From positions 248,001-312,000 of the forward strand of contig NW_027272031.1 in assembly GCF_040938485.1 (NCBI RefSeq): DNA of 64,000 bases, read 5' to 3'. Under the pieces are notes generated by a model. It saw nothing but the letters and a program-made list of their open reading frames with translations. It was not told the DNA's origin and did not search any database. The stretch is from Diadema antillarum. Taxonomy: Eukaryota. Numbering within the stretch: the first letter of the stretch is position 1; every line of letters starts with the position of its first letter. Made by a program: the position numbers and the translations under genes. Below, in pieces: positions 115-60,805 of this stretch.

Positions 115-2768
115 CTACGCCTTCTTTTTGTGTGTGTGTGTGTTTTGACAGAGGAAAGAAACATAAACACTAACAGATAGACAGACAGACAGAGACAAAC
201 AGACAGACATGAAAGCGCAATACATAACTAAAGGTAAGCAGCCCTCCACTGCACAACTTTCAAATTGAAAGTTAATCTGTATTCATAAATTCACAACATC
301 AGGAAAAGTGTGTCATGTGTACATTCAAAGCTCCTCGTCACTTTGGTCAAAAGAAGAGTGTTGAATTTCAACTCTATTTGATATCAATGTTTTCATGATA
401 TTTACATCAGTCTGTCTTGCAATGGAAATAAACCATTTCTATTGTAAGCATCAAACTGTCACCATAAGGAAGAGGTTTATGCTCTTTTAATCAAGGAACA
501 TTCACTCAAAATGTTTAGGAGTGCAATGATTTTGTTTTGCTTTGTTTTGTTTTTTCAATCCCGTGATGCAATGCAAGGGAGGGTCTACTACCTCTACAAG
601 AGAACAATGGGTAAAAGCTAGAGAGACTTCACAAAAACTCACGCAAGATGATAAGAAACATAGCAACAAGCACATTCAAAGCTACCTAGAATTTAGATCA
701 GTTTGCGAGTGTATAAAGAAGCATGGCACATAGCTACACTGAGGCACAAGACTCACATGTGGTAAAAGCGAGGCAAAGTATGTTAAACACAATGAATGCA
801 TTAAAGGCCAGCATGGTTTTTCTTTTTCCACACATTGTTAGGGAACGAAAAGAGCGAGGCTCTCAGCCAGAAAATGAAGAGTGGCTTGCATTGATGACTA
901 CATGTATCTATTTCTAACAATGGTTGAATGATAATAATTATATAATATGCCAGCTATTAAAAGAGATAAGATATCAAGAATTGATCATGGGAAAAAAAGT
1001 TGTAATAATTATAAATCTTTTTGTGTTATCACAGCTTTGTGCTTTTCATTTTACTACAGCAAAAAAAAAAGGCAACAAAAATTGAGAAGACTGCACATTT
1101 CTCATGATTTCTACCAAGAAAATACAAAACTGGCAGCAGAATACATTTGCTTTGTTGTGGATTGTTTGTTTGTTTGGTGTTTGTTTGTTTTTGTGCCTGC
1201 TGCTGCTCATTAATTCTCAAACAAATCAGAATCATTATGCCAGATGATACAATATCGTATTCATTGCAGTATGAATCATTTTTAATGCATCATTCATTAC
1301 GATACATAAAGTATGGTTGCAGTTTATTACCCACCACCCTGGGGTAAAACATATCATCCCAGATTAACAGAAATGCAGATGCGGCAAAGATGCTGCAGGC
1401 ATTATAATCCGTTTGGCACCATTGATGGCAGAGGGAAAAAAATCAAGGAAATGTTAAGAGGAGATCAACGAAGCAAAGAAGCGCCTCAAGAATAATGGTG
1501 TTATTGATTCTTGAAGTCACAGCAAATATGAGTGACACACTTTGTGTTACTTAGAAAGCTCCTAGGGCACAAAATGAGCAGCAAAAGGGGGCATGTGATT
1601 AAAGTTCAGAAAATAAGCAATGCAAAGTTTATGAGACAGAGGGCAGTTCAGACAGAAGAAGAAATCTTTTTGAAAGTATGGAGCTTTTTATGTCAAAAAC
1701 ATTTTCAAGAATGTATAAACTTTGAAACAGAGAACATTTCAGAAAAAAAAGAGAATCATCTTTTGGAGAGTATGGAGCTCTGATATTCGAATATTTTCAA
1801 GGAATGTATACAGCTGTAGTTCATCAGGACCGAACTGATGTTGGCATTTAAAACAAGCAAAGCAAACACTAACATTTCAGACATCCTTAAGACCTCTGTC
1901 ACATCTCAAGAGCCTACCTTAGGCGGGGGTCTTAGCATCGCAACAAGCCCCTTCGAGAATGGCTCAAAAACCACTTACACCTACGCCTTACATATACAGT
2001 GTATGCATCTGGGTATTTCTTCTTCTCTACCCTTCTATTTTTGCTTAAACCTACACCTTACATGTATGCATCTGGGTATTTTTTTATTTCTTCTTCTTCT
2101 TCTTTTCTTTTCTTTTTTTGCTGGTTTTTTCTATGCCATGTTTTAGTCATTACATGCACAACACAAATCACACCATTTTGCAAGCTTTTCTCTTTTTTTT
2201 TCTCTTTTTCTATCTTTCTTTAAAAAAGAAAATGGGTTCCAACAGTGAGCAAGGCAATGCTCTTTAACATAAGATGACATTCGTATGCAGATGGAAAATA
2301 TGAACACACACACACAGATGGATGGCAGATAGACAAAGAGCAACATGTAGCTGAGCTAAGACAGAGCGCACAGTCTCTCCTTGTACAGAAGTTACACACT
2401 TAATGAACCAAGATGAAACCAAAAAAAGAGGAATATGCAGGTGTTTGGAGCTAGTCTCGAGCACTTGAACAGAAATTCCTTCACACAAGGAGACAGAATG
2501 GTAAAGGCATTGACACCAAGATAATTATATAGAAGGGGTACAGATGACACCCGGGGTGATAAATCAATCAATTAATTAATTGAAAGAGGCCACATTCTAA
2601 CCAGTACCCTGAATGTGAGAGAAGGATTAGGTTCGTTCGTTTGAACTTATATTGCTCCCTTGGCTGGACAGCTCCGGACTCAGCTGGTGCTCGGGGGGTA
2701 CGTCCACCGCCCTCTCCTTCCTCGTGCTGGTGCCTGCCGTGGAGGGGACGGGCGGAGACCAGACTCAC

Positions 2769-2833
2769 ACCCGACGCCTTCCGGTGAGGAGGAGGAGGAG
2801 GACTCAACCTGGGCACTTGTGTTGGGTTGTAAC
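2769..2833 (-). CDS. PPP1R9A: Probable neurabin exon: LQPNTSAQVESSSSSSPEGVG (alternative frame GYNPTQVPRLSPPPPPHRKASG)
   Basis: Acceptor cccattccctcttccag, donor gtgagt; 65 nt. The GC-rich sequence continues past the donor, so the 3' boundary is uncertain. Confidence 0.6.
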
Positions 2834-3180
2834 CTGGAAGAGGGAATGGGTAGAATTTGGGAGATGAAGACAGCATTCGGTTTATATCGTACGTCACATG
2901 AAAATCAGGAGTAATACAAAATGACGTCATGCAGCAAAACAGTTGTAGTCACCTAATACAATTAATGCAATTCAGACTTCCTTTCAGTAAGAATATATCA
3001 TCCATGTGTATAATTAAAATCAAATTTGCTGAATAAATATAATAACAAAGACATTGATGTGCATAACAATCCTAGTTTAGCTCACTATACATGCTGCCTT
3101 TATTATCTCTCCAAGGTTCAAGGGCTGACCTACATGTATCCCAAAAGAACAAAGATATGTTTTGTGAAATGATGACTTAC

Positions 3181-3570: not shown

Positions 3571-3700
3571 CTTAGGATAGGCATCGCTGGTGGTAGGCCT
3601 GAGGAAGATGTTGGGGCGGGGACTGGAGACGGAGGAGTCTGGTATCCAGACGCCGCCGAGGCAGGAGGAGAGTTGTTGGTCACTGCTTCCCTCTGGTTCC
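3571..3700 (-). CDS. PPP1R9A: Probable neurabin exon: (K)EPEGSSDQQLSSCLGGVWIPDSSVSSPRPNIFLRPTTSDAYPK; also open in a second frame
   Basis: Acceptor aatccttttctgatag, donor gtgaga; 130 nt. The phase-2 reading has a strong C-ending codon bias. Confidence 0.75.
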
Positions 3701-8810: not shown

Positions 8811-9229
8811 TGGATTACATTCCCCCTTTACAACTGTTACAGTCGTAGTGTTTATTTGTCCCTAATCACGAGGTGAAATGATCATTAATAACAACAGAGG
8901 CTCATATCATCATCAACATGTCCCAACAATCAATCCACGCTTGTATGCATATGATGGTTTAGACATATCATTGACTAGACAACACTACTACCATGTGCAT
9001 AGAGACAATCAGCTGAGAAACAGAAGGACATTAATGCTGTACAGAGACTATGGTAATCAGTGCCTTTCTGGCTCTAAAAAGCTGCAGTGCATTCAAATCT
9101 CTTCAAAGTAATATTTCCTTTAATATCTTACTACAAGACCTAACTACTTGTTTGGGCTAAAATCTAACAGAGACTTTTTCTGAAACCATGTCTCAAGTGA
9201 TTGCAAATGAAAGAACATTGGTTCCTTAC

Positions 9230-9238
9230 ACATAAGTG
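9230..9238 (-). CDS. Candidate 9-nt microexon (TYV in phase 2)
   Basis: cctaatttcttttgctttgcggcaaagtttag|CACTTATGT|gtaagg; TGC motifs in the tract; frame-preserving. Confidence 0.3.
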
Positions 9239-9477
9239 CTAAACTTTGCCGCAAAGCAAAAGAAATTAGGCTGCAACACAACATTTACATGTGAACGATG
9301 TAAATATATCACATCCATGCATGAAAAAATACACGCATTTCATTCCACACAGTGTGACATCACTGACTGGCCCGTCTACCATATATTTGCTGTAAACGAC
9401 ACCAAAGCTGCAACTTAAAGGCGCCCAGACAAAAAAGCATGTTGGTACTAAGATTCACACTTCACTCGCAGACTTAC

Positions 9478-9492
9478 GGAAAATAGTGTCGG
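9478..9492 (-). CDS. Candidate 15-nt microexon (RHYFP in phase 2)
   Basis: T-rich tract ...ttttttaatgtctccgcgacaaatgcag, donor gtaagt; frame-preserving. Confidence 0.4.
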
Positions 9493-9991
9493 CTGCATTT
9501 GTCGCGGAGACATTAAAAAAAAAAGAATAAGTAAAAAAAAAAAGTAGTAGTAGGATGCAATACACATGAGTGTTATTTTTTCACGGAGTGTACAGTGTAG
9601 ACAACCAACATGCAACAAAAACTGTATCTTAATTATAGTAATAGCTACAACAACAAAAAATATAGACCCTTTCAGTTACAGTTAAAATTCTGAGTTCAGA
9701 TGGCAATATGCCCCATCCCACCCCAACCCCCCCCCCCCCCTCCCTTCTTAAAAAACTTTCTGATTGGCAAAATCACTTAATTTGTACTGTGAAGAATACA
9801 GTATTATGTGATTTTACTCTTTTCTTTCCAGTTTTGGAATAGTATCATACAGGTCTTTTATTTCTTATCACAATGGTATAAATTATTTGCAATGTTGCAA
9901 TATCACCACACTGTATGGTGCAGTCACTGTGAGGTGTGTCCTTAGATCCAAAACTACAAAATTCTGCATCACACTCATCTTTTTCCTATTT

Positions 9992-10367
9992 GTAAAGGTC
10001 CAGTTTACCTTTGGGAGCAGTGATTTCAAAAATGTTCAAGATATCACATTTGATGCATATGTGTAGGTCTGTTTGTATCATAAAACATCCTATCCAGTAT
10101 GAAATATTTTGCAATAAAACCTAAAATATAAGGAGATATCAGGGTTTTTCTCAATAAACCATAACTGTGTACGGTTTAGTCTAGAAACATTTTTATTATA
10201 AATAATTGTTCACATTTTGTGTATCTAAGCAACACTTAACATTGATTATACGGATTCTAAATTTTGACAGTGGTTGTTCTCTATAGTAACTTCACATTTT
10301 AGAACTATTTTAAAAGCACTAATGCTGAGTTTTTGTTTCATCTGCAAATGGTAAATTATGCCTTTAA
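9992..10367. mobile_element. Possible old Kolobok-like MITE
   Basis: gtaaaggtccagtttacc ... ggtaaattatgcctttaa; only partial terminal complementarity. Confidence 0.3.
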
Positions 10368-13274
10368 GCTGTATAAATACTCCAACTCTGGAATAAATCT
10401 CTTAACTTTACAGCGAAAATTGTCTCAGCTCTTGTGATTAAACACGAAGCCCCATTCGGCCAATGCTGCATGTTAGAGTGTTGACCACTAAACCATTCAG
10501 ATGCTGACCATGCATAGGTACACTGTATACTTCAGAGGCAGCAAACAGCAATACGATTGTAAAAGGTTCATTGGGTAGACCATTAGCCTACATTTATATG
10601 TACATTGTCATCAAACAGAATAACACATTTTCTGATCGACAGGACACAAAGGATCACCATTGCACAAATAAAGGCACAAGACTCCAGTTATAAACTAGCA
10701 CAAGACAAGCAACACTCAACAAACACATACACAATTATTATACTGTAGGGTGTCTGACAGACAGATTTTACATACCTACACAGATCAATTCGAGTGGAAG
10801 GACATGAACACAATAATCAAATTTGCAGTAAATTACTGCATAACTGAGATGTATTCCTAAATATATAACAAAACTACCTGTACTAAGATCTATTCATTTA
10901 CCACAACTCCAATTCCTACATGTACTTCAACATTATTACTACTATTGCTAATACTATTTTCTTTATAATTACTGCTACTAATACGGAGACTGATACGGTG
11001 TACTACTACTAAAACTACTTCCATTACTATCAGCAACTAATAAGACGGCATGTAATGCTACTGAAATATGTCAAAAACTGCAAATTCCTCATTTTCACGA
11101 TTTCACAATTTCCACAAATTTATCATATTCAGACATGTTCAAATGAGATTATCTTTATTTTGTGACCCCCAACAACTTTGTTCAGCATTTATACATAAGA
11201 ACTAATCAATATAGACTTCCTTTGAAAATATTATGACCAAAATTCTAATCCCAAGCCACTTGCTTTTCTTCAATTTGAACATGGTTGACAAGTGACTAAG
11301 ATGTTTGTATGGCAGTCCATATCCATAGTACCAGGTCATAGTTAACTGAGTTTGAGTATCATATGACCTATGTGTCACTAACTATTGTGTACACGGTGCT
11401 GTATAAAATGTGATGCAATAAGTGAAAAAAAGTACATCCAACGTTTTGTAAGGGTTGGTGGAAGCAGGGTGGGGGTGGGTGGAAAAACAGCAACAAAGGA
11501 AAGCATGTAACAACTCTAACCACCCAAATTCTTCTCTAAATATGAACTTCTATCACATTTCGTAAGCTGTATGTATGGTGGCTATTCCATAGATTGAAAA
11601 TGTGGTTATGAATGGTAATTCACTCAGTTCATTGATATCACATAGCAACAATTACTTTGGTAAATGTTTGTAGAAGTAGTAAATATCTAGGATACTGTTG
11701 ATGCCAAAATCTCACAGGATTATAGTTACCTTCACCTATGACCATCTTCTAATATTGTGTATAATGTAATAAAAAAGGAACAGCCAATCATTTTAGTCAA
11801 CCTCGTGAATATATCTCTCATAGTAACCTTTATATATCAGGATTAGGCTAAAGTGCATTACTCCCTTTTATAGGGGCATTTTGGTACATGTCTGAAAGTG
11901 AATCTCTTTTGTGGCAGTCTTGTAGAGGTTCTCATTAATCATACATACATGTAAGTACATTTTTCTCTGACAAATCTGTCAGAATGTTAGTAAGCACAGT
12001 CTCCCCAATTCTTCTGAAATAGATTGGCTACGACTATTGGCTGCTCACTGATGATCTAAATAAAGGTATTACCCACAGAAAATTTCAAGCTATGAAGTTA
12101 CTATGGTGTACATGTACTTTTAAAACCAGTGCCCATCAAAAGCCTACCTAATGAAGAGTCCATGAATTTTATCTGGAAATAATATGCACTAAAAAAAATA
12201 AATAATCACACTTTTGTTGTTTCACTTGCTCTAGTGACTGGAGCAAAATCACCTACAGTGACTGCATCTGCTATAGATTCTACATATTGTACCTGGACAG
12301 CATACAATAAACACACAAACAGACACACATGAAGGGAGAATAAACACATTTTTGACCGGTGGACAATGGCAAGACATGCTCACTGGACAACTGACTATAC
12401 GGATTGCAATATGTGCAAGCTGTTTAGACAGAATCACGATATAATTGCATCGATCTTCATCAGTGCCCTAAGTCTCGTCTACGTGAAAGTAAAAGGCAAC
12501 CACTACTTTAATAGACTTTTAAATCTGCCAAAAGTCGCAAAGGCTGGACGCTTTTGCGAACTCTGATCCTGGATGGAGGCATTTTGCTTTTCAAAAACAC
12601 TGGACAGATTCCAAGAAATCTCTCATTTGTGTACAAGGTACATACATGTATGTGCCAGTATGACCAAAGGACAAAGATTTGAATCTGTCAAACCTAGATC
12701 CTCAAAAATGAATTACAGGTTTTATGACCCTTGAGATTTTATAAATGCTATTTCTAAAAAAATAAAATCATCAATGTCATTTTCTATTATAATAATGACA
12801 ACACCTTTTACAGACCAGTGTGAAAGGAAGAAAAAAATCCTTACTTTAGTATGATTCTAAATTGTTACATGAATGGTTTTTAGGCTTTAAATCTAATAAG
12901 CACCAATGTCTGTATCATTAGTATTCAGATTTTGAGTAGATTGCTGTGGATTAAACTTGAAACCATTTGTTACATCTATGTGGTCTCGTAGCTTTCTAAC
13001 CGTGTTCCTCGGAAACATAAATACCATGTGACCTGCCTGGTTGATTGCAAGGCATGCTGGGAACAATCTGCAACCACTGACAGCCATTTTTTGTCACTGT
13101 TATAATTTTGCTGCCACAACTGGCCATTGCTGCACATGGGAATGGTGCATGTCCATCATGCAAATACATTTGACCAAAAATAACTTTAAAAAGTCAAGGT
13201 TTTTAGGCCACATTTTCTTTCAAATTTCATCTAACATTGACCACTATGTGCATGTTCTATTAAGAAGCTTTTAC

Positions 13275-13301
13275 CTTCTTATCCATGGGTTGTAGTAGAT
13301 T
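13275..13301 (-). CDS. Candidate 27-nt microexon (IYYNPWIR in phase 2)
   Basis: Long upstream pyrimidine tract ending ctcattcacag, donor AAG|gtaaaa; frame-preserving. Confidence 0.35.
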
Positions 13302-14587
13302 CTGTGAATGAGTTTAAACACAGGAGCAATTGGGCGTGATAGAAAGAAAAAGGAATACATGACGCAAGTAGAGAAAGAAAGTATAGCGGACAGGTCAAGA
13401 CGACGTGTTATTTCACACATGAGCGAGGAATGGGATAATGCTAGCAAATAAATGAATTTGTTGTAAACATTACATTACAGAATACACATTAAATATGTAC
13501 GTTCACATCAATATCAACCAGGTACAAAAATTAGTTGGGAAATAATGAATGATTAAGAAACAAAATCTGTGAAGCAAAGTAAATTAAATTGTGCAAACTC
13601 ACATGAATATAATTTTCTCATCCCAGAGTAAATTATGACTTCTAAATAGCTTCCAAATTCATTTCAATATCATATTTTAAATGCTTTTGGATTTAAGTGG
13701 CTATAGGAGAAATTATGACATTCTGACATGTAACAGATGTCTAAAATTTCCATCATACGCATTTTATGTGTGTACTAGCCATGAGGCAGATATCCAGCAG
13801 AATCATAAATTAAATAAATAAAATCACTTTTATGCTTTCCACTGGATGTTTTATAATATTATACAAGTGCTTCCACAAACAAGAGTATAATTACACTGTG
13901 CTAGAAACAAGCGAGCAAAGAAAATAACATGTGCTGGTATATGTCACAAGATTGCAAATAAACATTCGCTGAGTGGTATCGAGAGTCGTCTAACACAGAC
14001 AACATGTGCACAACCCATGTCTAGATCTAACACAGCTACATGTCTTTCTTTAAATTTGTCTATATCAAAGAGAGCTCTGATGGAATCGTGAAAATTGTTC
14101 ATCAGTAAAGGTGCAGTCTGCTCGAACACACCTTGAGGTAAATGTAAAAAAGCAAACTTCGTTGATTCCACAAAGTAAGTATACTTTGTTTTGAACAGTA
14201 TATCACTCAACTACAGAGAAAAAAAATGGCCCCTGCTAACTATGCTATGGAAGATATATATTATAAAAAAATGTATGATACAGGGTGAAATATAATTGTC
14301 CCACAAATCTCACACTTTCATATGATTCCCTATTACTGTGCTTCTAAAAATCTTTTAACCCACAGTCCACTTTAGCTCCAATAACTTTTTTTTCGAGGCC
14401 CAATTTGTTGGAATGCAAATCTATTTTATTTTTTATTTTTGGCCAAAATTGCGGCCCATCAGAGAGAGCTTAGCGGGCCATCAGTGGAACACGGTCCACT
14501 GGTTGAGAAGTGCGACCCTATTAGACTCTGTAGCGTATCATCCAAATGCTATGTCTAATTAGAATTTCCCTTGCTTTGAATACTCAC

Positions 14588-14853
14588 TTTTCTGCCGGAA
14601 GAGGCCTTCCCAACTTGGGTGACCTCGGCGGTGACCTCTGACCTTCGTCCCTGCTGACCTTTGGCCCTCCTGTCTCCATAAGCACCCGACCCAGCTGGGG
14701 CGAGGCGGGCTTGTTGCGGGCGACCTCGCTGGGTTTGGTGGACGGAGGCATGCTCGGGAGGACTCGAATCATCTGCGTGCGCTCGGCGGAGACCGGCTGG
14801 GTCTTCCTAGGGGCCACCGGACTCTCCCTCGTGGGGACCAATTCATCCATCAA
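14588..14853 (-). CDS. PPP1R9A: Neurabin exon: Pro/Ser-rich LMDELVPTRESPVAPRK...RSPPRSPKLGRPLPAE(K)
   Basis: Acceptor caataatttcag, donor gtgagt; 266 nt, phase 0>2; GC-rich open frame. Confidence 0.85.
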
Positions 14854-15280
14854 CTGAAATTATTGTAACCACGGTGAAAAGACAACGATTCAGATTTCAC
14901 CCATAATAAGCAACGCCTCGAGAATTATAAACATATCAGAGGGCATACACACATACACAAAATGCACTTCCGAACAGACATGTATAAAGAGACACATAAA
15001 AGTCTAATTTTGATGTTAGTGGTATTAAAGTTCGTCTTTAGTGTGAAATAACCCTTCAAATAACAGTGAAAACAATTAACACAGTTAACCACTAGACAAA
15101 CAAAAAATTAACAACCATAAGGCTACAAAATTTTCACATGTTATCATCTTCTTTTTAGTTCTTAATTAGTGTCAAGGGTCATAACAATTTCAGGTGAAGG
15201 TATATAACGATGTAAGCAGGAATGAGAGGGGGTTCTCGGATCCTTCCTGCTGCTACGAAAGGTCTAGAGTCTGCCATGGA

Positions 15281-19929: not shown

Positions 19930-22510
19930 CAGACAAACAAAGACATCACATCTTTCACAGCACATGCCCAAACTCTCAAACAAGACACAAGGGGAGGGTG
20001 GGGGTGGGGAGATATATCCCATTGGCAAACACTGTGTGGGGGAGTTTGGAATATATGACGCAAGTGTGAGGTCAATGCAAACAAATGTGGTAATCTACAT
20101 AGCTGTGACATATTTGATGTACTGTTTCAAATATTTCTTGCTGAAAGATTTTCAATGTCTAGAGGATCGTCTAATCATAAATTCATACTTCTTAATACAG
20201 TGTATTTCCTAAACAGACTAAAACTGTCATATGTTTCCTACAATCAATCTATGAGTGGCTTTTGATATGCCACTGAGTTCCTATTTGTTAAGACTTTCAT
20301 GACCATGATATATTTATTTCATAATTCATTCTTAATACTGTCTCCAGTGATGAAACTTCTGATTTGGGTTCTATTTTCTAATCAATAAATCTTTGTACAC
20401 TGTACTTGTTTGTTTTCTGAATGTCTGCATGTGAAAGATCATCTCACTGAAATGAATAAATCAAACAACTGGACAAATGAATGAATGAATAGATAGATAA
20501 AAAGAAAACCAATGAAATACTTAAATAGATATATAATCAAATAGAAATGAAAATATTAATTACAAAAATCACAAGTATCATTAATGCTCTATGAAGGACT
20601 GGACTATCTTACAAATCTGTCAATAAACTATCCATGGCAGGGGACTCACATGAAATATAACAGATTTGTGTAGTTTTCTGGTGAATGAAAATCATAGTGA
20701 AAAACAATTCCACCACACAGGTATTAAACCAAAGCATTCACATTCAAGGGAGGGGTGTGGGTTATGTTGGGTGTACAACTTAATGTCAGTGATTACAATT
20801 CAATCTAATCATGCATATTCATAAACCTTACTGACATGACTTAACATGCACAGGAATACATCAAGGAAAATACTGCAAATCTCAGTGCAAGCCGTGCGTC
20901 TAACAGAAAATAAACAACAATCAGTTCTTTGAGAGCAAGACTGAACTCCAACTTATTTTATCCTCGTGGCTTCTTTGTCAAAGTTCTTACCACAAATTAG
21001 CTGTCCCATGTCGAAGTCCCACTCAAAGTCTGTTATTTGTGAATTACAGTTATTGTATGACATGTGTTAATCATGACTGACTGATAAATAGCTTAAACAT
21101 GAATTAATTCAAAAGAAATATATGTGAGATGGAAAGAGATATATATAAAGCTGAAAAGATTTGAGACAGATTCAAAGGCAAACATTTGGACAAATGAAAG
21201 AAACGACACGTAATAAAACAGATGCAAGAAATCATATAAAGAAAATGAACATTTTACAGCAGGAAATAAGGGAGAAAAAACATAGGAACAGATATGGAAA
21301 CAATATGATCACAATATTATGATAGCCTCAAGGATTTGAGTTAATCCCTAGCAAAAAAGAAAAAGAAGAATCATTGAAATAGCAAGGTAAGAAGAAAGTT
21401 AATAACTGAATAAGAGGAGATTGAAAGATCAGAAAACTTAAATCACTGGAAATTTACTGGCAGACTTCTTGTCAAGCAACACTGAGGCAAATTTATTTGT
21501 TCAGCACAAGTGAAAGTAAAACAAGCAAAATATGAGGGGTTTTTTTGTTTTGCTTTCAGAAACATTATACAAAACAACAAAACTTTAAGCTCCAGTACAA
21601 ATTTAAATATAGTAAACAGAATAATCTCAAGGTTATGTTCACCAATCCACTTCAAATAAGTTCTTTGATAAGTGTAGCGCAATAGTATATATTCAATTTT
21701 AGGTTCGGCAAAGAACAATCATTTTGGCAAATGATTCCCGACACTTGCATTGTTTTGACTTGTGAGTTTAATACATTTGTCAAAAAGTCTTTGTTCTTTA
21801 AAATAAATGATAAGAGCCTTAGAATCATATTCATGAATCCTATCAATAAAGAAGAAATCAATGTTAGTATCCAATTCACTTTTGATAAAGACATTTTGTC
21901 ACATTAGATATTTAAGAACATCATTCCCCAGCATTAAACTCCCGCAAAGCGATATCATGGGACACAGTTGAAAGAAAGAAAAACTGAATAAAACAAATTG
22001 GCACAGAATGGTGAAAGACAAGACAGGAGATAGGTATCAAAATGGCAATGAACATGGCAAAGTAAAAATTGATGACAAAAGCTGAATAAAAAGATGAAAA
22101 GAAAGAAAAAGAAGTAGAGATGGCTTCATATGTTTGATGTGAAATGTACATGTAGATTGATTAATTGATATACATGAAAAATTGATATAAAATGAGTTAA
22201 TTGCTGTATGGCATACTTTGGACGGATGGACACATTTTCACTGCTACCTAAAAATTGTGAACACTATCTGAGAATTTAAACCTTGGATATTTTCAACTTT
22301 GTGATGTTATATCGCTGACATCATTCATTTTCCAACAAAGTAGTTGACATACAAACACACACACATACACACATACATGAATCAAGACATAAACTTTAAG
22401 ATATTGAAGATATTAACAATGAAATGTTGTTGGAATTTGAAAACGCTCAAGTGTTACGCTGAAGGTATACATCTGAAAATATCTCATGAAATTTCAAGGA
22501 TAATTCTTAC

Positions 22511-35356: not shown

Positions 35357-35497
35357 NNNNNNNNNNNNNNNNNNNNNNNNNNNNNNNNNNNNNNNNNNNN
35401 NNNNNNNNNNNNNNNNNNNNNNNNNNNNNNNNNNNNNNNNNNNNNNNNNNNNNNNNNNNNNNNNNNNNNNNNNNNNNNNNNNNNNNNNNNNNNNNNN
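35357..35497. other. Assembly gap (141 N)
   Basis: N-run. Confidence 1.
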
Positions 35498-45879: not shown

Positions 45880-46011
45880 NNNNNNNNNNNNNNNNNNNNN
45901 NNNNNNNNNNNNNNNNNNNNNNNNNNNNNNNNNNNNNNNNNNNNNNNNNNNNNNNNNNNNNNNNNNNNNNNNNNNNNNNNNNNNNNNNNNNNNNNNNNNN
46001 NNNNNNNNNNN
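45880..46011. other. Assembly gap (132 N)
   Basis: N-run. Confidence 1.
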
Positions 46012-60489: not shown

Positions 60490-60805
60490 NNNNNNNNNNN
60501 NNNNNNNNNNNNNNNNNNNNNNNNNNNNNNNNNNNNNNNNNNNNNNNNNNNNNNNNNNNNNNNNNNNNNNNNNNNNNNNNNNNNNNNNNNNNNNNNNNNN
60601 NNNNNNNNNNNNNNNNNNNNNNNNNNNNNNNNNNNNNNNNNNNNNNNNNNNNNNNNNNNNNNNNNNNNNNNNNNNNNNNNNNNNNNNNNNNNNNNNNNNN
60701 NNNNNNNNNNNNNNNNNNNNNNNNNNNNNNNNNNNNNNNNNNNNNNNNNNNNNNNNNNNNNNNNNNNNNNNNNNNNNNNNNNNNNNNNNNNNNNNNNNNN
60801 NNNNN
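60490..60805. other. Assembly gap (316 N)
   Basis: N-run. Confidence 1.

What the first reader, a model, noticed from the sequence alone, without database searches (positions are those of the whole stretch)
9230..13301. Three frame-preserving microexon candidates (27, 15 and 9 nt) that together encode a Tyr-rich insert
In the phase-2 intron between 14588 and 3700, three tiny segments each have a pyrimidine tract plus AG and a GTAA donor: 13275-13301, 9478-9492 and 9230-9238. All are multiples of 3 and stop-free alone or combined, giving K-IYYNPWIR-S-RHYFP-TYV-E. TGC motifs lie in the tracts of the 9- and 15-nt candidates. Established: neural microexons in bilaterians are typically 3-27 nt, frame-preserving and driven by SRRM3/4 (eMIC domain) through UGC motifs, and neurabin is a synaptic scaffold. 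Inference: a combinatorial microexon cassette that adds tyrosine motifs to an invertebrate neurabin. Caveat: I found these by eye and discarded weaker 7-nt candidates, so selection bias is possible.
Basis: partly seen in the sequence, partly recalled or inferred. Interest (0 to 1): 0.72.

Follow-up and report, generated by a model that had tools for sequence, protein, structure and literature searches.

The report
Two real neurabin microexons, one false
Two of the three tiny candidate exons (27 and 15 bases) in this sea-urchin neurabin gene are genuine, old, optional mini-exons that add a 14-residue peptide to a synaptic scaffold protein and are missing from this species' annotation; the 9-base candidate is a chance match.

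Summary
The window lies in the neurabin/spinophilin gene of a sea urchin, almost certainly Diadema antillarum. Motif counting alone does not distinguish them: about 3.7 such sites are expected per intron of this size.

Other evidence supports two of them.
- **27-nt (13301-13275) and 15-nt (9492-9478):** these are the only true conservation islands in an otherwise unalignable 10.9-kb intron when compared with Lytechinus variegatus and Strongylocentrotus purpuratus. Each differs by one synonymous change, and the AG and GTAA sites are kept.
- **Annotated isoforms:** nine L. variegatus RefSeq isoforms read ...TEK-IYYNPWIR-S-RHYF-P-EPD..., exactly the predicted 14-residue insert. Two isoforms skip it.
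- **Starfish:** Asterias has a 27-nt exon at the same phase-2 position (FMCSPWIR) plus a 45-nt second exon, annotated in all four combinations.
- **9-nt candidate (9238-9230):** it has no counterpart in either urchin and appears in no isoform. A contig of a related genome lacks both of its splice sites.

Neural specificity and SRRM/UGC control remain untested because no RNA run was available. The four D. antillarum isoforms fetched, and every D. setosum, L. pictus and S. purpuratus isoform fetched, lack the insert.

This scan earlier reported a similar unannotated Diadema microexon elsewhere in the genome (s1-224586).

The parts
14588..14853 (-). Constitutive upstream exon of the neurabin gene (..LMDELVPTRES...GRPLPAEK). 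It ends in phase 2 (..GAAAA|GTGAGT).
   Evidence: It matches L. variegatus neurabin-1-like residues 519-600 and D. antillarum XP_071487704.1.
13275..13301 (-). 27-nt alternative coding microexon A. It encodes (K)IYYNPWIR plus 2 nt. Acceptor cacAG at 13303-13302; donor GTAAAA at 13274-13269.
   Evidence: One search gives the sequence. It is a conservation island against L013, L014 and L015 (E 3e-11 to 4e-11 against Lv/Sp; alignment A1). Changes are synonymous, or nearly all synonymous in L013. Its peptide is present in nine L. variegatus RefSeq isoforms. A homologous 27-nt exon exists in Asterias rubens at L016 75033-75059.
9478..9492 (-). 15-nt alternative coding microexon B. It encodes (S)RHYF plus CC, which gives P. 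Acceptor tgcAG; donor GTAAGT. A long T-rich tract lies 20-55 nt upstream, and UCUC..UGC lies next to the AG.
   Evidence: One search gives the sequence. In Lv (L014 82575-82589) and Sp (L015 63307-63321) it is identical except TTT/TTC, with AG and GTAAGT kept. The peptide SRHYFP is in the same nine Lv isoforms.
9230..9238 (-). 9-nt candidate (TYV), rejected as a chance AG-N9-GT match.
   Evidence: No isoform in any species carries TYV. No orthologue exists in the Lv/Sp interval, and local alignment is at shuffle level. A contig of a ~90-95% identical relative has AG>GG and GT>GC here, plus two changes inside the 9 nt. There are 27 AG-N9-GT segments in this interval alone.
3571..3700 (-). Downstream exon (K|EPEGSSDQQ...GYQTPPSPVPAP...AMPILR). 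This copy carries a 1-nt insertion relative to the sister copy on contig C125.
9316..9321 (-). UGCAUG (Rbfox-type hexamer) 157 nt downstream of the 15-nt exon. It is also present at +122 in Lv and +113 in Sp. It is a candidate downstream splicing enhancer (inference).
Evidence: The GCATG background is 0.10-0.18 per 200 nt in the three introns.

Best explanation
The window covers the coiled-coil-to-SAM part of the neurabin/spinophilin (PPP1R9) orthologue of a diadematoid sea urchin, almost certainly Diadema antillarum.

The 10.9-kb phase-2 intron between 14588 and 3700 contains two genuine cassette microexons:
- a 27-nt exon (13301-13275);
- a 15-nt exon (9492-9478).

Both are multiples of three, so each can be included or skipped without changing the frame. 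Together they insert IYYNPWIRSRHYFP into the proline-rich, low-complexity linker between the coiled coil and the C-terminal SAM domain.

The 27-nt exon is old. An exon of the same length and phase, ending ..PWIR, sits at the same junction in the starfish Asterias, so it predates the urchin-starfish split. The conserved core is [N/S]-P-W-I-R. The tyrosines are an echinoid feature.

Inferred, not shown:
- The insert is a short linear motif that changes a protein-protein contact of the scaffold, as is usual for microexons.
- Inclusion is tissue-regulated, probably in neurons. Candidate cis elements are a distal pyrimidine tract plus UGC near the acceptors (SRRM/eMIC type) and a conserved UGCAUG downstream of the 15-nt exon (Rbfox type).

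The 9-nt candidate is a chance match.
For: **Gene identity**
- PDZ exons upstream of the window hit Drosophila Spinophilin and neurabin-1/2 PDZ structures at E 1e-19 to 1e-11.
- A SAM exon lies downstream.
- The locus is collinear exon by exon with L. variegatus neurabin-1-like X1.
- The RKVTF PP1 motif lies 58 residues before the PDZ core, at the same distance as in primate neurabin-1.

**The two microexons**
- Against an ENA contig of another echinoid (L013), L. variegatus (L014) and S. purpuratus (L015), the only real intronic blastn islands are the 27-nt and 15-nt segments. They are collinear, with AG and GT kept and length kept.
- Changes against Lv/Sp are one synonymous third-position change in each exon.
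- Against L013 there are 6 changes. Four are synonymous and two fall in one codon (I>T).
- RefSeq isoforms X1, X2, X3, X5, X6, X7, X8, X10 and X11 of L. variegatus read TEK-IYYNPWIRSRHYFP-EPD. Isoforms X4 and X9 skip the insert.

**Starfish**
- Asterias rubens and A. amurensis isoforms show none, A only (FMCSPWIR-R), B only, or A+B.
- The genomic exons are 27 and 45 nt in phase 2 with AG/GT.

**Second copy in this assembly**
- Both microexons are identical in the second copy on contig C125.
Against: - No RNA from this species could be examined. The one run found is DNA of a relative.
- The four D. antillarum isoforms fetched and the one D. setosum protein fetched all skip the insert.
- The L. 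variegatus and Asterias isoforms are automated RefSeq models. I could not see their read support.
- The 15-nt exon was not found in the 7 kb of L013 downstream of the exon, although that contig ends there.
- UGC positions are not conserved between species, and L013 has none within 80 nt of the 27-nt exon.
- The window's own copy of the gene has frame-breaking indels in two downstream exons. This particular copy may be a poorly polished haplotig or a broken allele.
Confidence: 0.88

Rival explanations
1. All three segments are chance splice-like motifs in a long AT-rich intron, picked by eye.
For: The density of such motifs equals the shuffle expectation: 6 observed against 3.7 +/- 1.9 expected, and 3.6 per 10.9 kb over the window's minus strand. 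No RNA evidence exists in this species.
Against: The 27-nt and 15-nt segments are the only conserved islands of the intron in three or two other echinoids, with synonymous-only change. Their exact peptide is in nine L. variegatus isoforms. A homologous 27-nt exon is annotated in Asterias.
Confidence: 0.02
2. The two conserved islands are non-coding intronic elements, for example recursive-splicing exons or splicing enhancers that help remove a long intron. On this view they never remain in mature mRNA, and the RefSeq isoforms that contain them are model artefacts.
For: They sit in a long intron and have strong 5' splice sites directly after a 3' splice site, as recursive-splicing exons do. The RefSeq models are automated.
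Against: - Substitutions fall at synonymous positions.
- Lengths stay multiples of three, at 27 nt from starfish to urchins.
- The junction codons are kept.
- Independent annotations in two classes (Lytechinus, Asterias rubens, A. amurensis) contain them, and in Asterias in all combinations.
Confidence: 0.05
3. The 9-nt segment is also a real microexon, but is specific to the Diadema lineage.
For: It has a YAG acceptor, three UGC motifs within 40 nt upstream and a GTAAGG donor. It is identical in both copies of this assembly.
Against: - The two assembly copies are 97.6% identical overall, so identity there says little.
- A contig of a ~90-95% identical relative has lost both splice sites and changed 2 of the 9 bases.
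- There is no counterpart in Lv/Sp and no isoform with TYV.
- 27 equally shaped AG-N9-GT segments lie in the same interval.
Confidence: 0.04

Closest known systems
Annotated microexon pair of Lytechinus variegatus neurabin-1-like (XP_041467142.1 and eight other isoforms; gene on CM031015.1)
   Same: The junction, phase and lengths (27 + 15 nt) are the same, and the peptide IYYNPWIRSRHYFP is identical. The DNA differs by one synonymous base per exon.
   Different: In the Diadema proteins fetched (four D. antillarum isoforms, one D. setosum protein) the insert is absent. The intron is 10.9 kb here against 4.7 kb in Lytechinus. The upstream intron sequence, including UGC positions, is not alignable.
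Asterias rubens / A. amurensis neurabin alternative exons (FMCSPWIR, 27 nt; PVDYHMDAVYRQLI, 45 nt)
   Same: The position in the protein, the phase 2 and the 27-nt first exon ending ..CCG TGG ATA CGC AG|GTAA are the same. The serine junction codon into the second exon is the same. Both exons are optional.
   Different: The second exon is 45 nt, not 15. The first exon has no tyrosines. All four combinations are annotated, whereas Lytechinus shows only both or none.
Bilaterian neural microexon programme (3-27 nt exons driven by the eMIC domain of SRRM3/4 or Srrm234 through UGC-containing intronic enhancers)
   Same: Size, frame preservation, deep conservation, location in a synaptic scaffold gene and in a disordered linker, and pyrimidine tracts placed far from the AG. 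In Diadema there is a UCUC..UGC arrangement next to the AG of the 15-nt exon (architecture as described in bioRxiv 10.1101/2024.09.17.613571).
   Different: Neural inclusion and SRRM dependence are not shown. The UGC position is not conserved among the urchins, and L013 has none for the 27-nt exon. No vertebrate neurabin representative among the 120 listed hits carries a PW[IVLM][RK] insert.

Membership tests
Microexon (alternatively spliced coding exon of 3-27 nt) | Length of 27 nt or less, with canonical AG/GT borders | tested here: met
   27 nt and 15 nt, with AG acceptors and GTAAAA / GTAAGT donors. The same holds in Lv, Sp, L013 and Asterias.
Microexon (alternatively spliced coding exon of 3-27 nt) | Frame-preserving and under coding constraint | tested here: met
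   Both are multiples of 3 and stop-free in phase 2. Differences from Lv/Sp are synonymous only. Against L013, 4 of 6 changes are synonymous.
Microexon (alternatively spliced coding exon of 3-27 nt) | Present in mature mRNA of some isoforms and skipped in others | tested here: inconclusive
   Met in the orthologues: 9 including and 2 skipping isoforms in L. variegatus, and four combinations in Asterias. These are automated models. No RNA of this species was available, and the Diadema isoforms fetched all skip the insert.
Microexon (alternatively spliced coding exon of 3-27 nt): the 9-nt candidate | Any support beyond AG-N9-GT | tested here: not met
   No orthologue, no isoform, splice sites lost in a relative's contig, and 27 similar segments in the same interval.
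Neural SRRM3/4 (eMIC)-dependent microexon | Neural-enriched inclusion | not testable with these tools
   The only run found is DNA contigs.
Neural SRRM3/4 (eMIC)-dependent microexon | UGC motif between the branch point / pyrimidine tract and the AG, with the pyrimidine tract far from the AG | tested here: inconclusive
   UGC positions are Diadema 27-nt at -27 and 15-nt at -5, Lv -53 / -33, Sp -57 / -33, Asterias -19, and L013 none. The best pyrimidine window lies at -50 to -78 in most cases. About one UGC per 60-80 nt is expected by chance.
Neural SRRM3/4 (eMIC)-dependent microexon | An Srrm234 gene with an eMIC domain in the genome, and dependence on it | tested here: inconclusive
   The Pfam SRRM_C (PF15230) six-frame search of the own genome gave no match, and the controls gave none either, so the search is uninformative. 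Dependence needs an experiment.
Neurabin / spinophilin (PPP1R9) scaffold | PDZ domain of the neurabin type | tested here: met
   PDZ exons at L008 6064-6234 and L007 6553-6657 have as best hits Drosophila Spinophilin 4xhv and neurabin-1 2fn5/3hvq, at E 2.5e-19 to 2.5e-11.
Neurabin / spinophilin (PPP1R9) scaffold | PP1-binding RVxF motif just N-terminal of the PDZ | tested here: met
   RKVTF sits 58 residues before the PDZ core in XP_071487704.1 (sister copy of this locus). Primate neurabin-1 has RKIKF at the same distance.
Neurabin / spinophilin (PPP1R9) scaffold | Coiled coil followed by a C-terminal SAM domain | tested here: met
   Coiled-coil exons at 46352-45311 and 35180-35076. The SAM exon lies about 1.8-2.0 kb below the window's first base. 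The locus is collinear with L. variegatus neurabin-1-like. Precomputed Pfam hits are PF00536 and PF07647.
Neurabin / spinophilin (PPP1R9) scaffold | N-terminal F-actin-binding region | not tested
   It lies far upstream of the window and was not examined.

The most novel reading that the evidence does not exclude
The 27-nt ..PWIR exon and its partner form an echinoderm-wide combinatorial microexon cassette, roughly 450-500 million years old by my own estimate of the urchin-starfish split. It places a conserved short linear motif ([N/S]PWIR, tyrosine-rich in echinoids) into the neurabin linker specifically in neurons, under Srrm234 (eMIC) and/or Rbfox control. That would be a deeply conserved neural microexon outside vertebrates and insects, with a testable effect on a PP1/actin synaptic scaffold.
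Probability: 0.35. Interest if true: 0.55.

Novelty: new member of a known kind. Interest (0 to 1): 0.4.

Why it matters
It fills an annotation gap. None of the D. antillarum, D. setosum, L. pictus or S. purpuratus neurabin proteins fetched here carries these two exons, although the DNA is intact in D. antillarum and S. purpuratus.

It also gives a clean non-vertebrate example of microexons held under coding constraint from starfish to sea urchins in a synaptic scaffold gene. The conserved PWIR core is a concrete peptide to test for binding partners.

As a point of method, motif counting alone would have dismissed candidates that comparative data then confirmed.

No paper in the searchable library mentions microexons together with neurabin or PPP1R9A.

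Tried and rejected
- **RNA evidence.** The look-up of sequencing runs with the upstream exon gave a single run of unknown kind. Laid on 9000-14950, it turned out to be DNA contigs of a ~90-95% identical relative. It was useful only for the 9-nt site. The differences at the 27-nt and 15-nt sites were not among the rows listed.
- **Word search with the 89-aa exon.** No hit, because of the length filter.
- **Pfam on window ORFs.** Only the LINE ORF hit.
- **Sister copy on C125.** It is 97.6% identical, which is too close to test conservation.
- **Alternative acceptor at 3690.** I considered it to explain the two open frames of the 3700 exon. I rejected it once the C125 copy and XP_071487704.1 showed a 1-nt indel instead.
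- **Third blastn 'island' at 11039-10896.** It is a (GTA)n microsatellite, not conservation.
- **15-nt exon in L013.** Not found.
- **Loci that returned no DNA.** Amphiura, Acanthaster and D. setosum have gene ranges over 100 kb. Apostichopus is not on record.
- **SRRM_C family search of the own genome.** Uninformative.
- **Joined spliced model.** Exons were searched one by one by reference.
- **N runs.** The N runs at 35357-35497, 45880-46011 and 60490-60805 were left alone.
Full report
**Observation**

- cacAG|AATCTACTACAACCCATGGATAAGAAG|GTAAAA (13301-13275)
- tgcAG|CCGACACTATTTTCC|GTAAGT (9492-9478)
- tttAG|CACTTATGT|GTAAGG (9238-9230)

The upstream exon ends ..GCAGAAAA|GTGAGT at 14588 in phase 2. 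The next exon starts at 3700 after ctgatAG. The predicted reading K-IYYNPWIR-S-RHYF-P-TYV-E is correct.

**Is the motif count more than chance? No.**

- The sense strand of the 10,887-nt intron (36% G+C) holds 21 stop-free AG-(3n)-GTAA segments of 3-27 nt.
- Six remain after adding a YAG acceptor and at least 60% pyrimidines in the 25 nt upstream.
- Dinucleotide-preserving shuffles give 3.7 +/- 1.9 (P of 3 or more = 0.73; P of 6 or more = 0.16).
- The whole minus strand of the window gives 3.6 per 10.9 kb.
- The antisense strand gives none, but that strand is purine-rich.

The motif pattern alone says nothing.

**Gene and organism**

- PDZ exons upstream of the window (L008 6064-6234, L007 6553-6657) hit Drosophila Spinophilin and neurabin-1/2 PDZ structures best, at E 2.5e-19 to 2.5e-11.
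- A SAM exon lies just below the window.
- tblastn of L. variegatus neurabin-1-like X1 lays the whole C-terminal two thirds of the protein collinearly over the window and its flanks.
- The best non-Lytechinus, non-Strongylocentrotus relative is XP_071487704.1 of Diadema antillarum. It is encoded on a 640,249-bp contig, which is the length of contig C125 of this assembly.
- C125 carries a second, 97.6% identical copy of this locus. Its exons translate to that protein without a break.
- That protein has RKVTF 58 residues before the PDZ core, as primate neurabin-1 has RKIKF.

So the gene is a neurabin, and the genome is almost certainly D. antillarum.

**Comparative test**

The 89-aa upstream exon, searched by reference against the representative library, found a genomic ORF on an ENA contig of another echinoid (L013) and L. 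variegatus neurabin-1-like X4.

- *L013.* blastn of the window's sense strand against L013 gave one collinear intronic hit, window 13305-13269. L013 reads ctacgtacAG|GACGTACTACAACCCCTGGATTCGAAG|GTAAAAAG. It is 27 nt in the same phase and encodes (K)TYYNPWIR. Of six changes, four are synonymous and two fall in one codon.
- *L. variegatus (L014) and S. purpuratus (L015).* I fetched both loci. Both hold tacAG|AATCTACTACAACCCGTGGATAAGAAG|GTAAAA and tttAG|CCGACACTATTTCCC|GTAAGT, in order, between the same two exons. Each differs from Diadema by one synonymous base.
- *Rest of the intron.* It does not align otherwise. The only other hit is a (GTA)n microsatellite. Alignments A1 and A2 show identity collapsing within a few bases of the splice sites.

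**Isoform test**

- Nine RefSeq isoforms of L. variegatus read ..GRPLVTEK-IYYNPWIRSRHYFP-EPDTSTDH.., which is the 27 + 15 nt insert residue for residue. X4 and X9 skip it.
- None has one exon alone, and none has TYV.
- All fetched isoforms of L. pictus, S. purpuratus, D. antillarum (X1-X4) and D. setosum skip the insert. In those species the exons are unannotated, although in S. purpuratus and Diadema the DNA is intact.

**Depth of conservation**

In Asterias rubens and A. amurensis the same junction shows four forms:
- GESS|ELAS (no insert)
- GESS-FMCSPWIR-R-ELAS
- GESS-S-PVDYHMDAVYRQLI-R-ELAS
- both inserts together

On the A. rubens locus these are a 27-nt exon (L016 75033-75059..CCG TGG ATA CGC AG|GTAACG) and a 45-nt exon (76802-76846). 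Both are in phase 2 with AG/GT.

The 27-nt exon is therefore shared by sea stars and sea urchins, and its conserved core is [N/S]PWIR. The ophiuroid Amphiura protein has ..CFYAYSPGMKR.. at the equivalent place. This may be the same exon, but I could not get its DNA. Among the 120 listed hits, mostly vertebrate neurabins, none carries a PW[IVLM][RK] insert. These are one isoform per cluster, so absence is not shown.

**The 9-nt candidate**

- It appears in no isoform.
- It has no counterpart in the 1.2-1.5 kb Lv/Sp interval between the 15-nt exon and the next exon. Local alignment of its +/-60 nt scores at shuffle level.
- The single contig of run X1 that covers it (about 90% identical) reads AG>GG at the acceptor (9240), GT>GC at the donor (9228), and changes 2 of the 9 bases.
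- Twenty-seven AG-N9-GT segments lie in the same interval.

I take it for a chance match.

**Mechanism**

*Shown:* two frame-preserving cassette exons under coding constraint, optional in the annotated orthologues.

*Inferred:*
- The 14-residue insert sits in a proline-rich, low-complexity linker between the coiled coil and the SAM domain. It most likely acts as a short linear motif.
- The tyrosines (YYN fits the pY-x-N pattern of Grb2-type SH2 ligands, from my own knowledge) are not conserved in Asterias. The constant part is PWIR.

*Regulation is open:*
- In Diadema the 15-nt exon has a long T tract 20-55 nt upstream, then UCUC..UGC abutting the AG. The 27-nt exon has UGC at -27 and its best pyrimidine window at -54. 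This resembles the SRRM3/4-type architecture described in bioRxiv 10.1101/2024.09.17.613571.
- The UGC positions differ in Lv/Sp, and L013 has none.
- A UGCAUG lies 113-157 nt downstream of the 15-nt exon in all three urchins, against a GCATG background of 0.10-0.18 per 200 nt. This is a post-hoc hint of Rbfox control.
- No RNA run was available, so tissue specificity is untested.

**Verdict**

Microexons in synaptic scaffold genes are a known kind, and this pair is already modelled by RefSeq in Lytechinus and Asterias. The finding is a new member of a known kind. No paper in the library links microexons with neurabin or PPP1R9A. The scan has already reported a parallel case in this genome, an unannotated RBFOX microexon (s1-224586).

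N runs were left untouched.

Noticed in passing
window 3571-3700 and 2639-2847 (minus strand): Relative to the sister copy on contig C125 and to XP_071487704.1, the window copy has a 1-nt insertion (G, near 3652) in one exon and +1 (T) and +4 (GAAG) insertions in the next. These break the reading frame, while C125 reads through. This explains the 'dual-frame exon' of note s1-215157 without any 8-nt frame-switch microexon. The window copy is either a poorly polished haplotig or a broken allele.
   Followed up: partly
window 20992-21030 (minus strand): A 39-nt exon encodes DFEWDFDMGQLIC. It is 92% identical to the L. variegatus exon that isoform X2 skips, so this is another small alternative exon of the same gene.
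   Followed up: partly
window 51531-54626 (minus strand): An uninterrupted 1031-aa ORF with endonuclease/exonuclease/phosphatase and reverse-transcriptase domains (RVT_1, E 7e-37). This is an apparently intact non-LTR retrotransposon inside a neurabin intron, in the gene's orientation.
   Followed up: no
window 9995-10392: Contigs of run X1 pile up here to a summed depth of 360,000-670,000, with many internal joints. This is a very high-copy short repeat inside the intron.
   Followed up: no
window 10896-11039; L014 81380-81485; L015 62329-62443: A (GTA)n/(AGT)n microsatellite sits between the two microexons in all three urchins. It is collinear, but it is low complexity, not sequence conservation.
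   Followed up: yes
L015 60939-60965 and 63307-63321 (S. purpuratus AAGJ06000869.1): Both microexons are intact with splice sites in S. purpuratus, but none of the S. purpuratus isoforms fetched contains them. This is a probable annotation gap there too.
   Followed up: partly
G000:C125:270001-300000 against the window: The assembly (1.75 Gb, 2963 contigs) holds this locus twice at 97.6% identity over at least 22 kb. That fits both haplotypes being assembled separately.
   Followed up: partly
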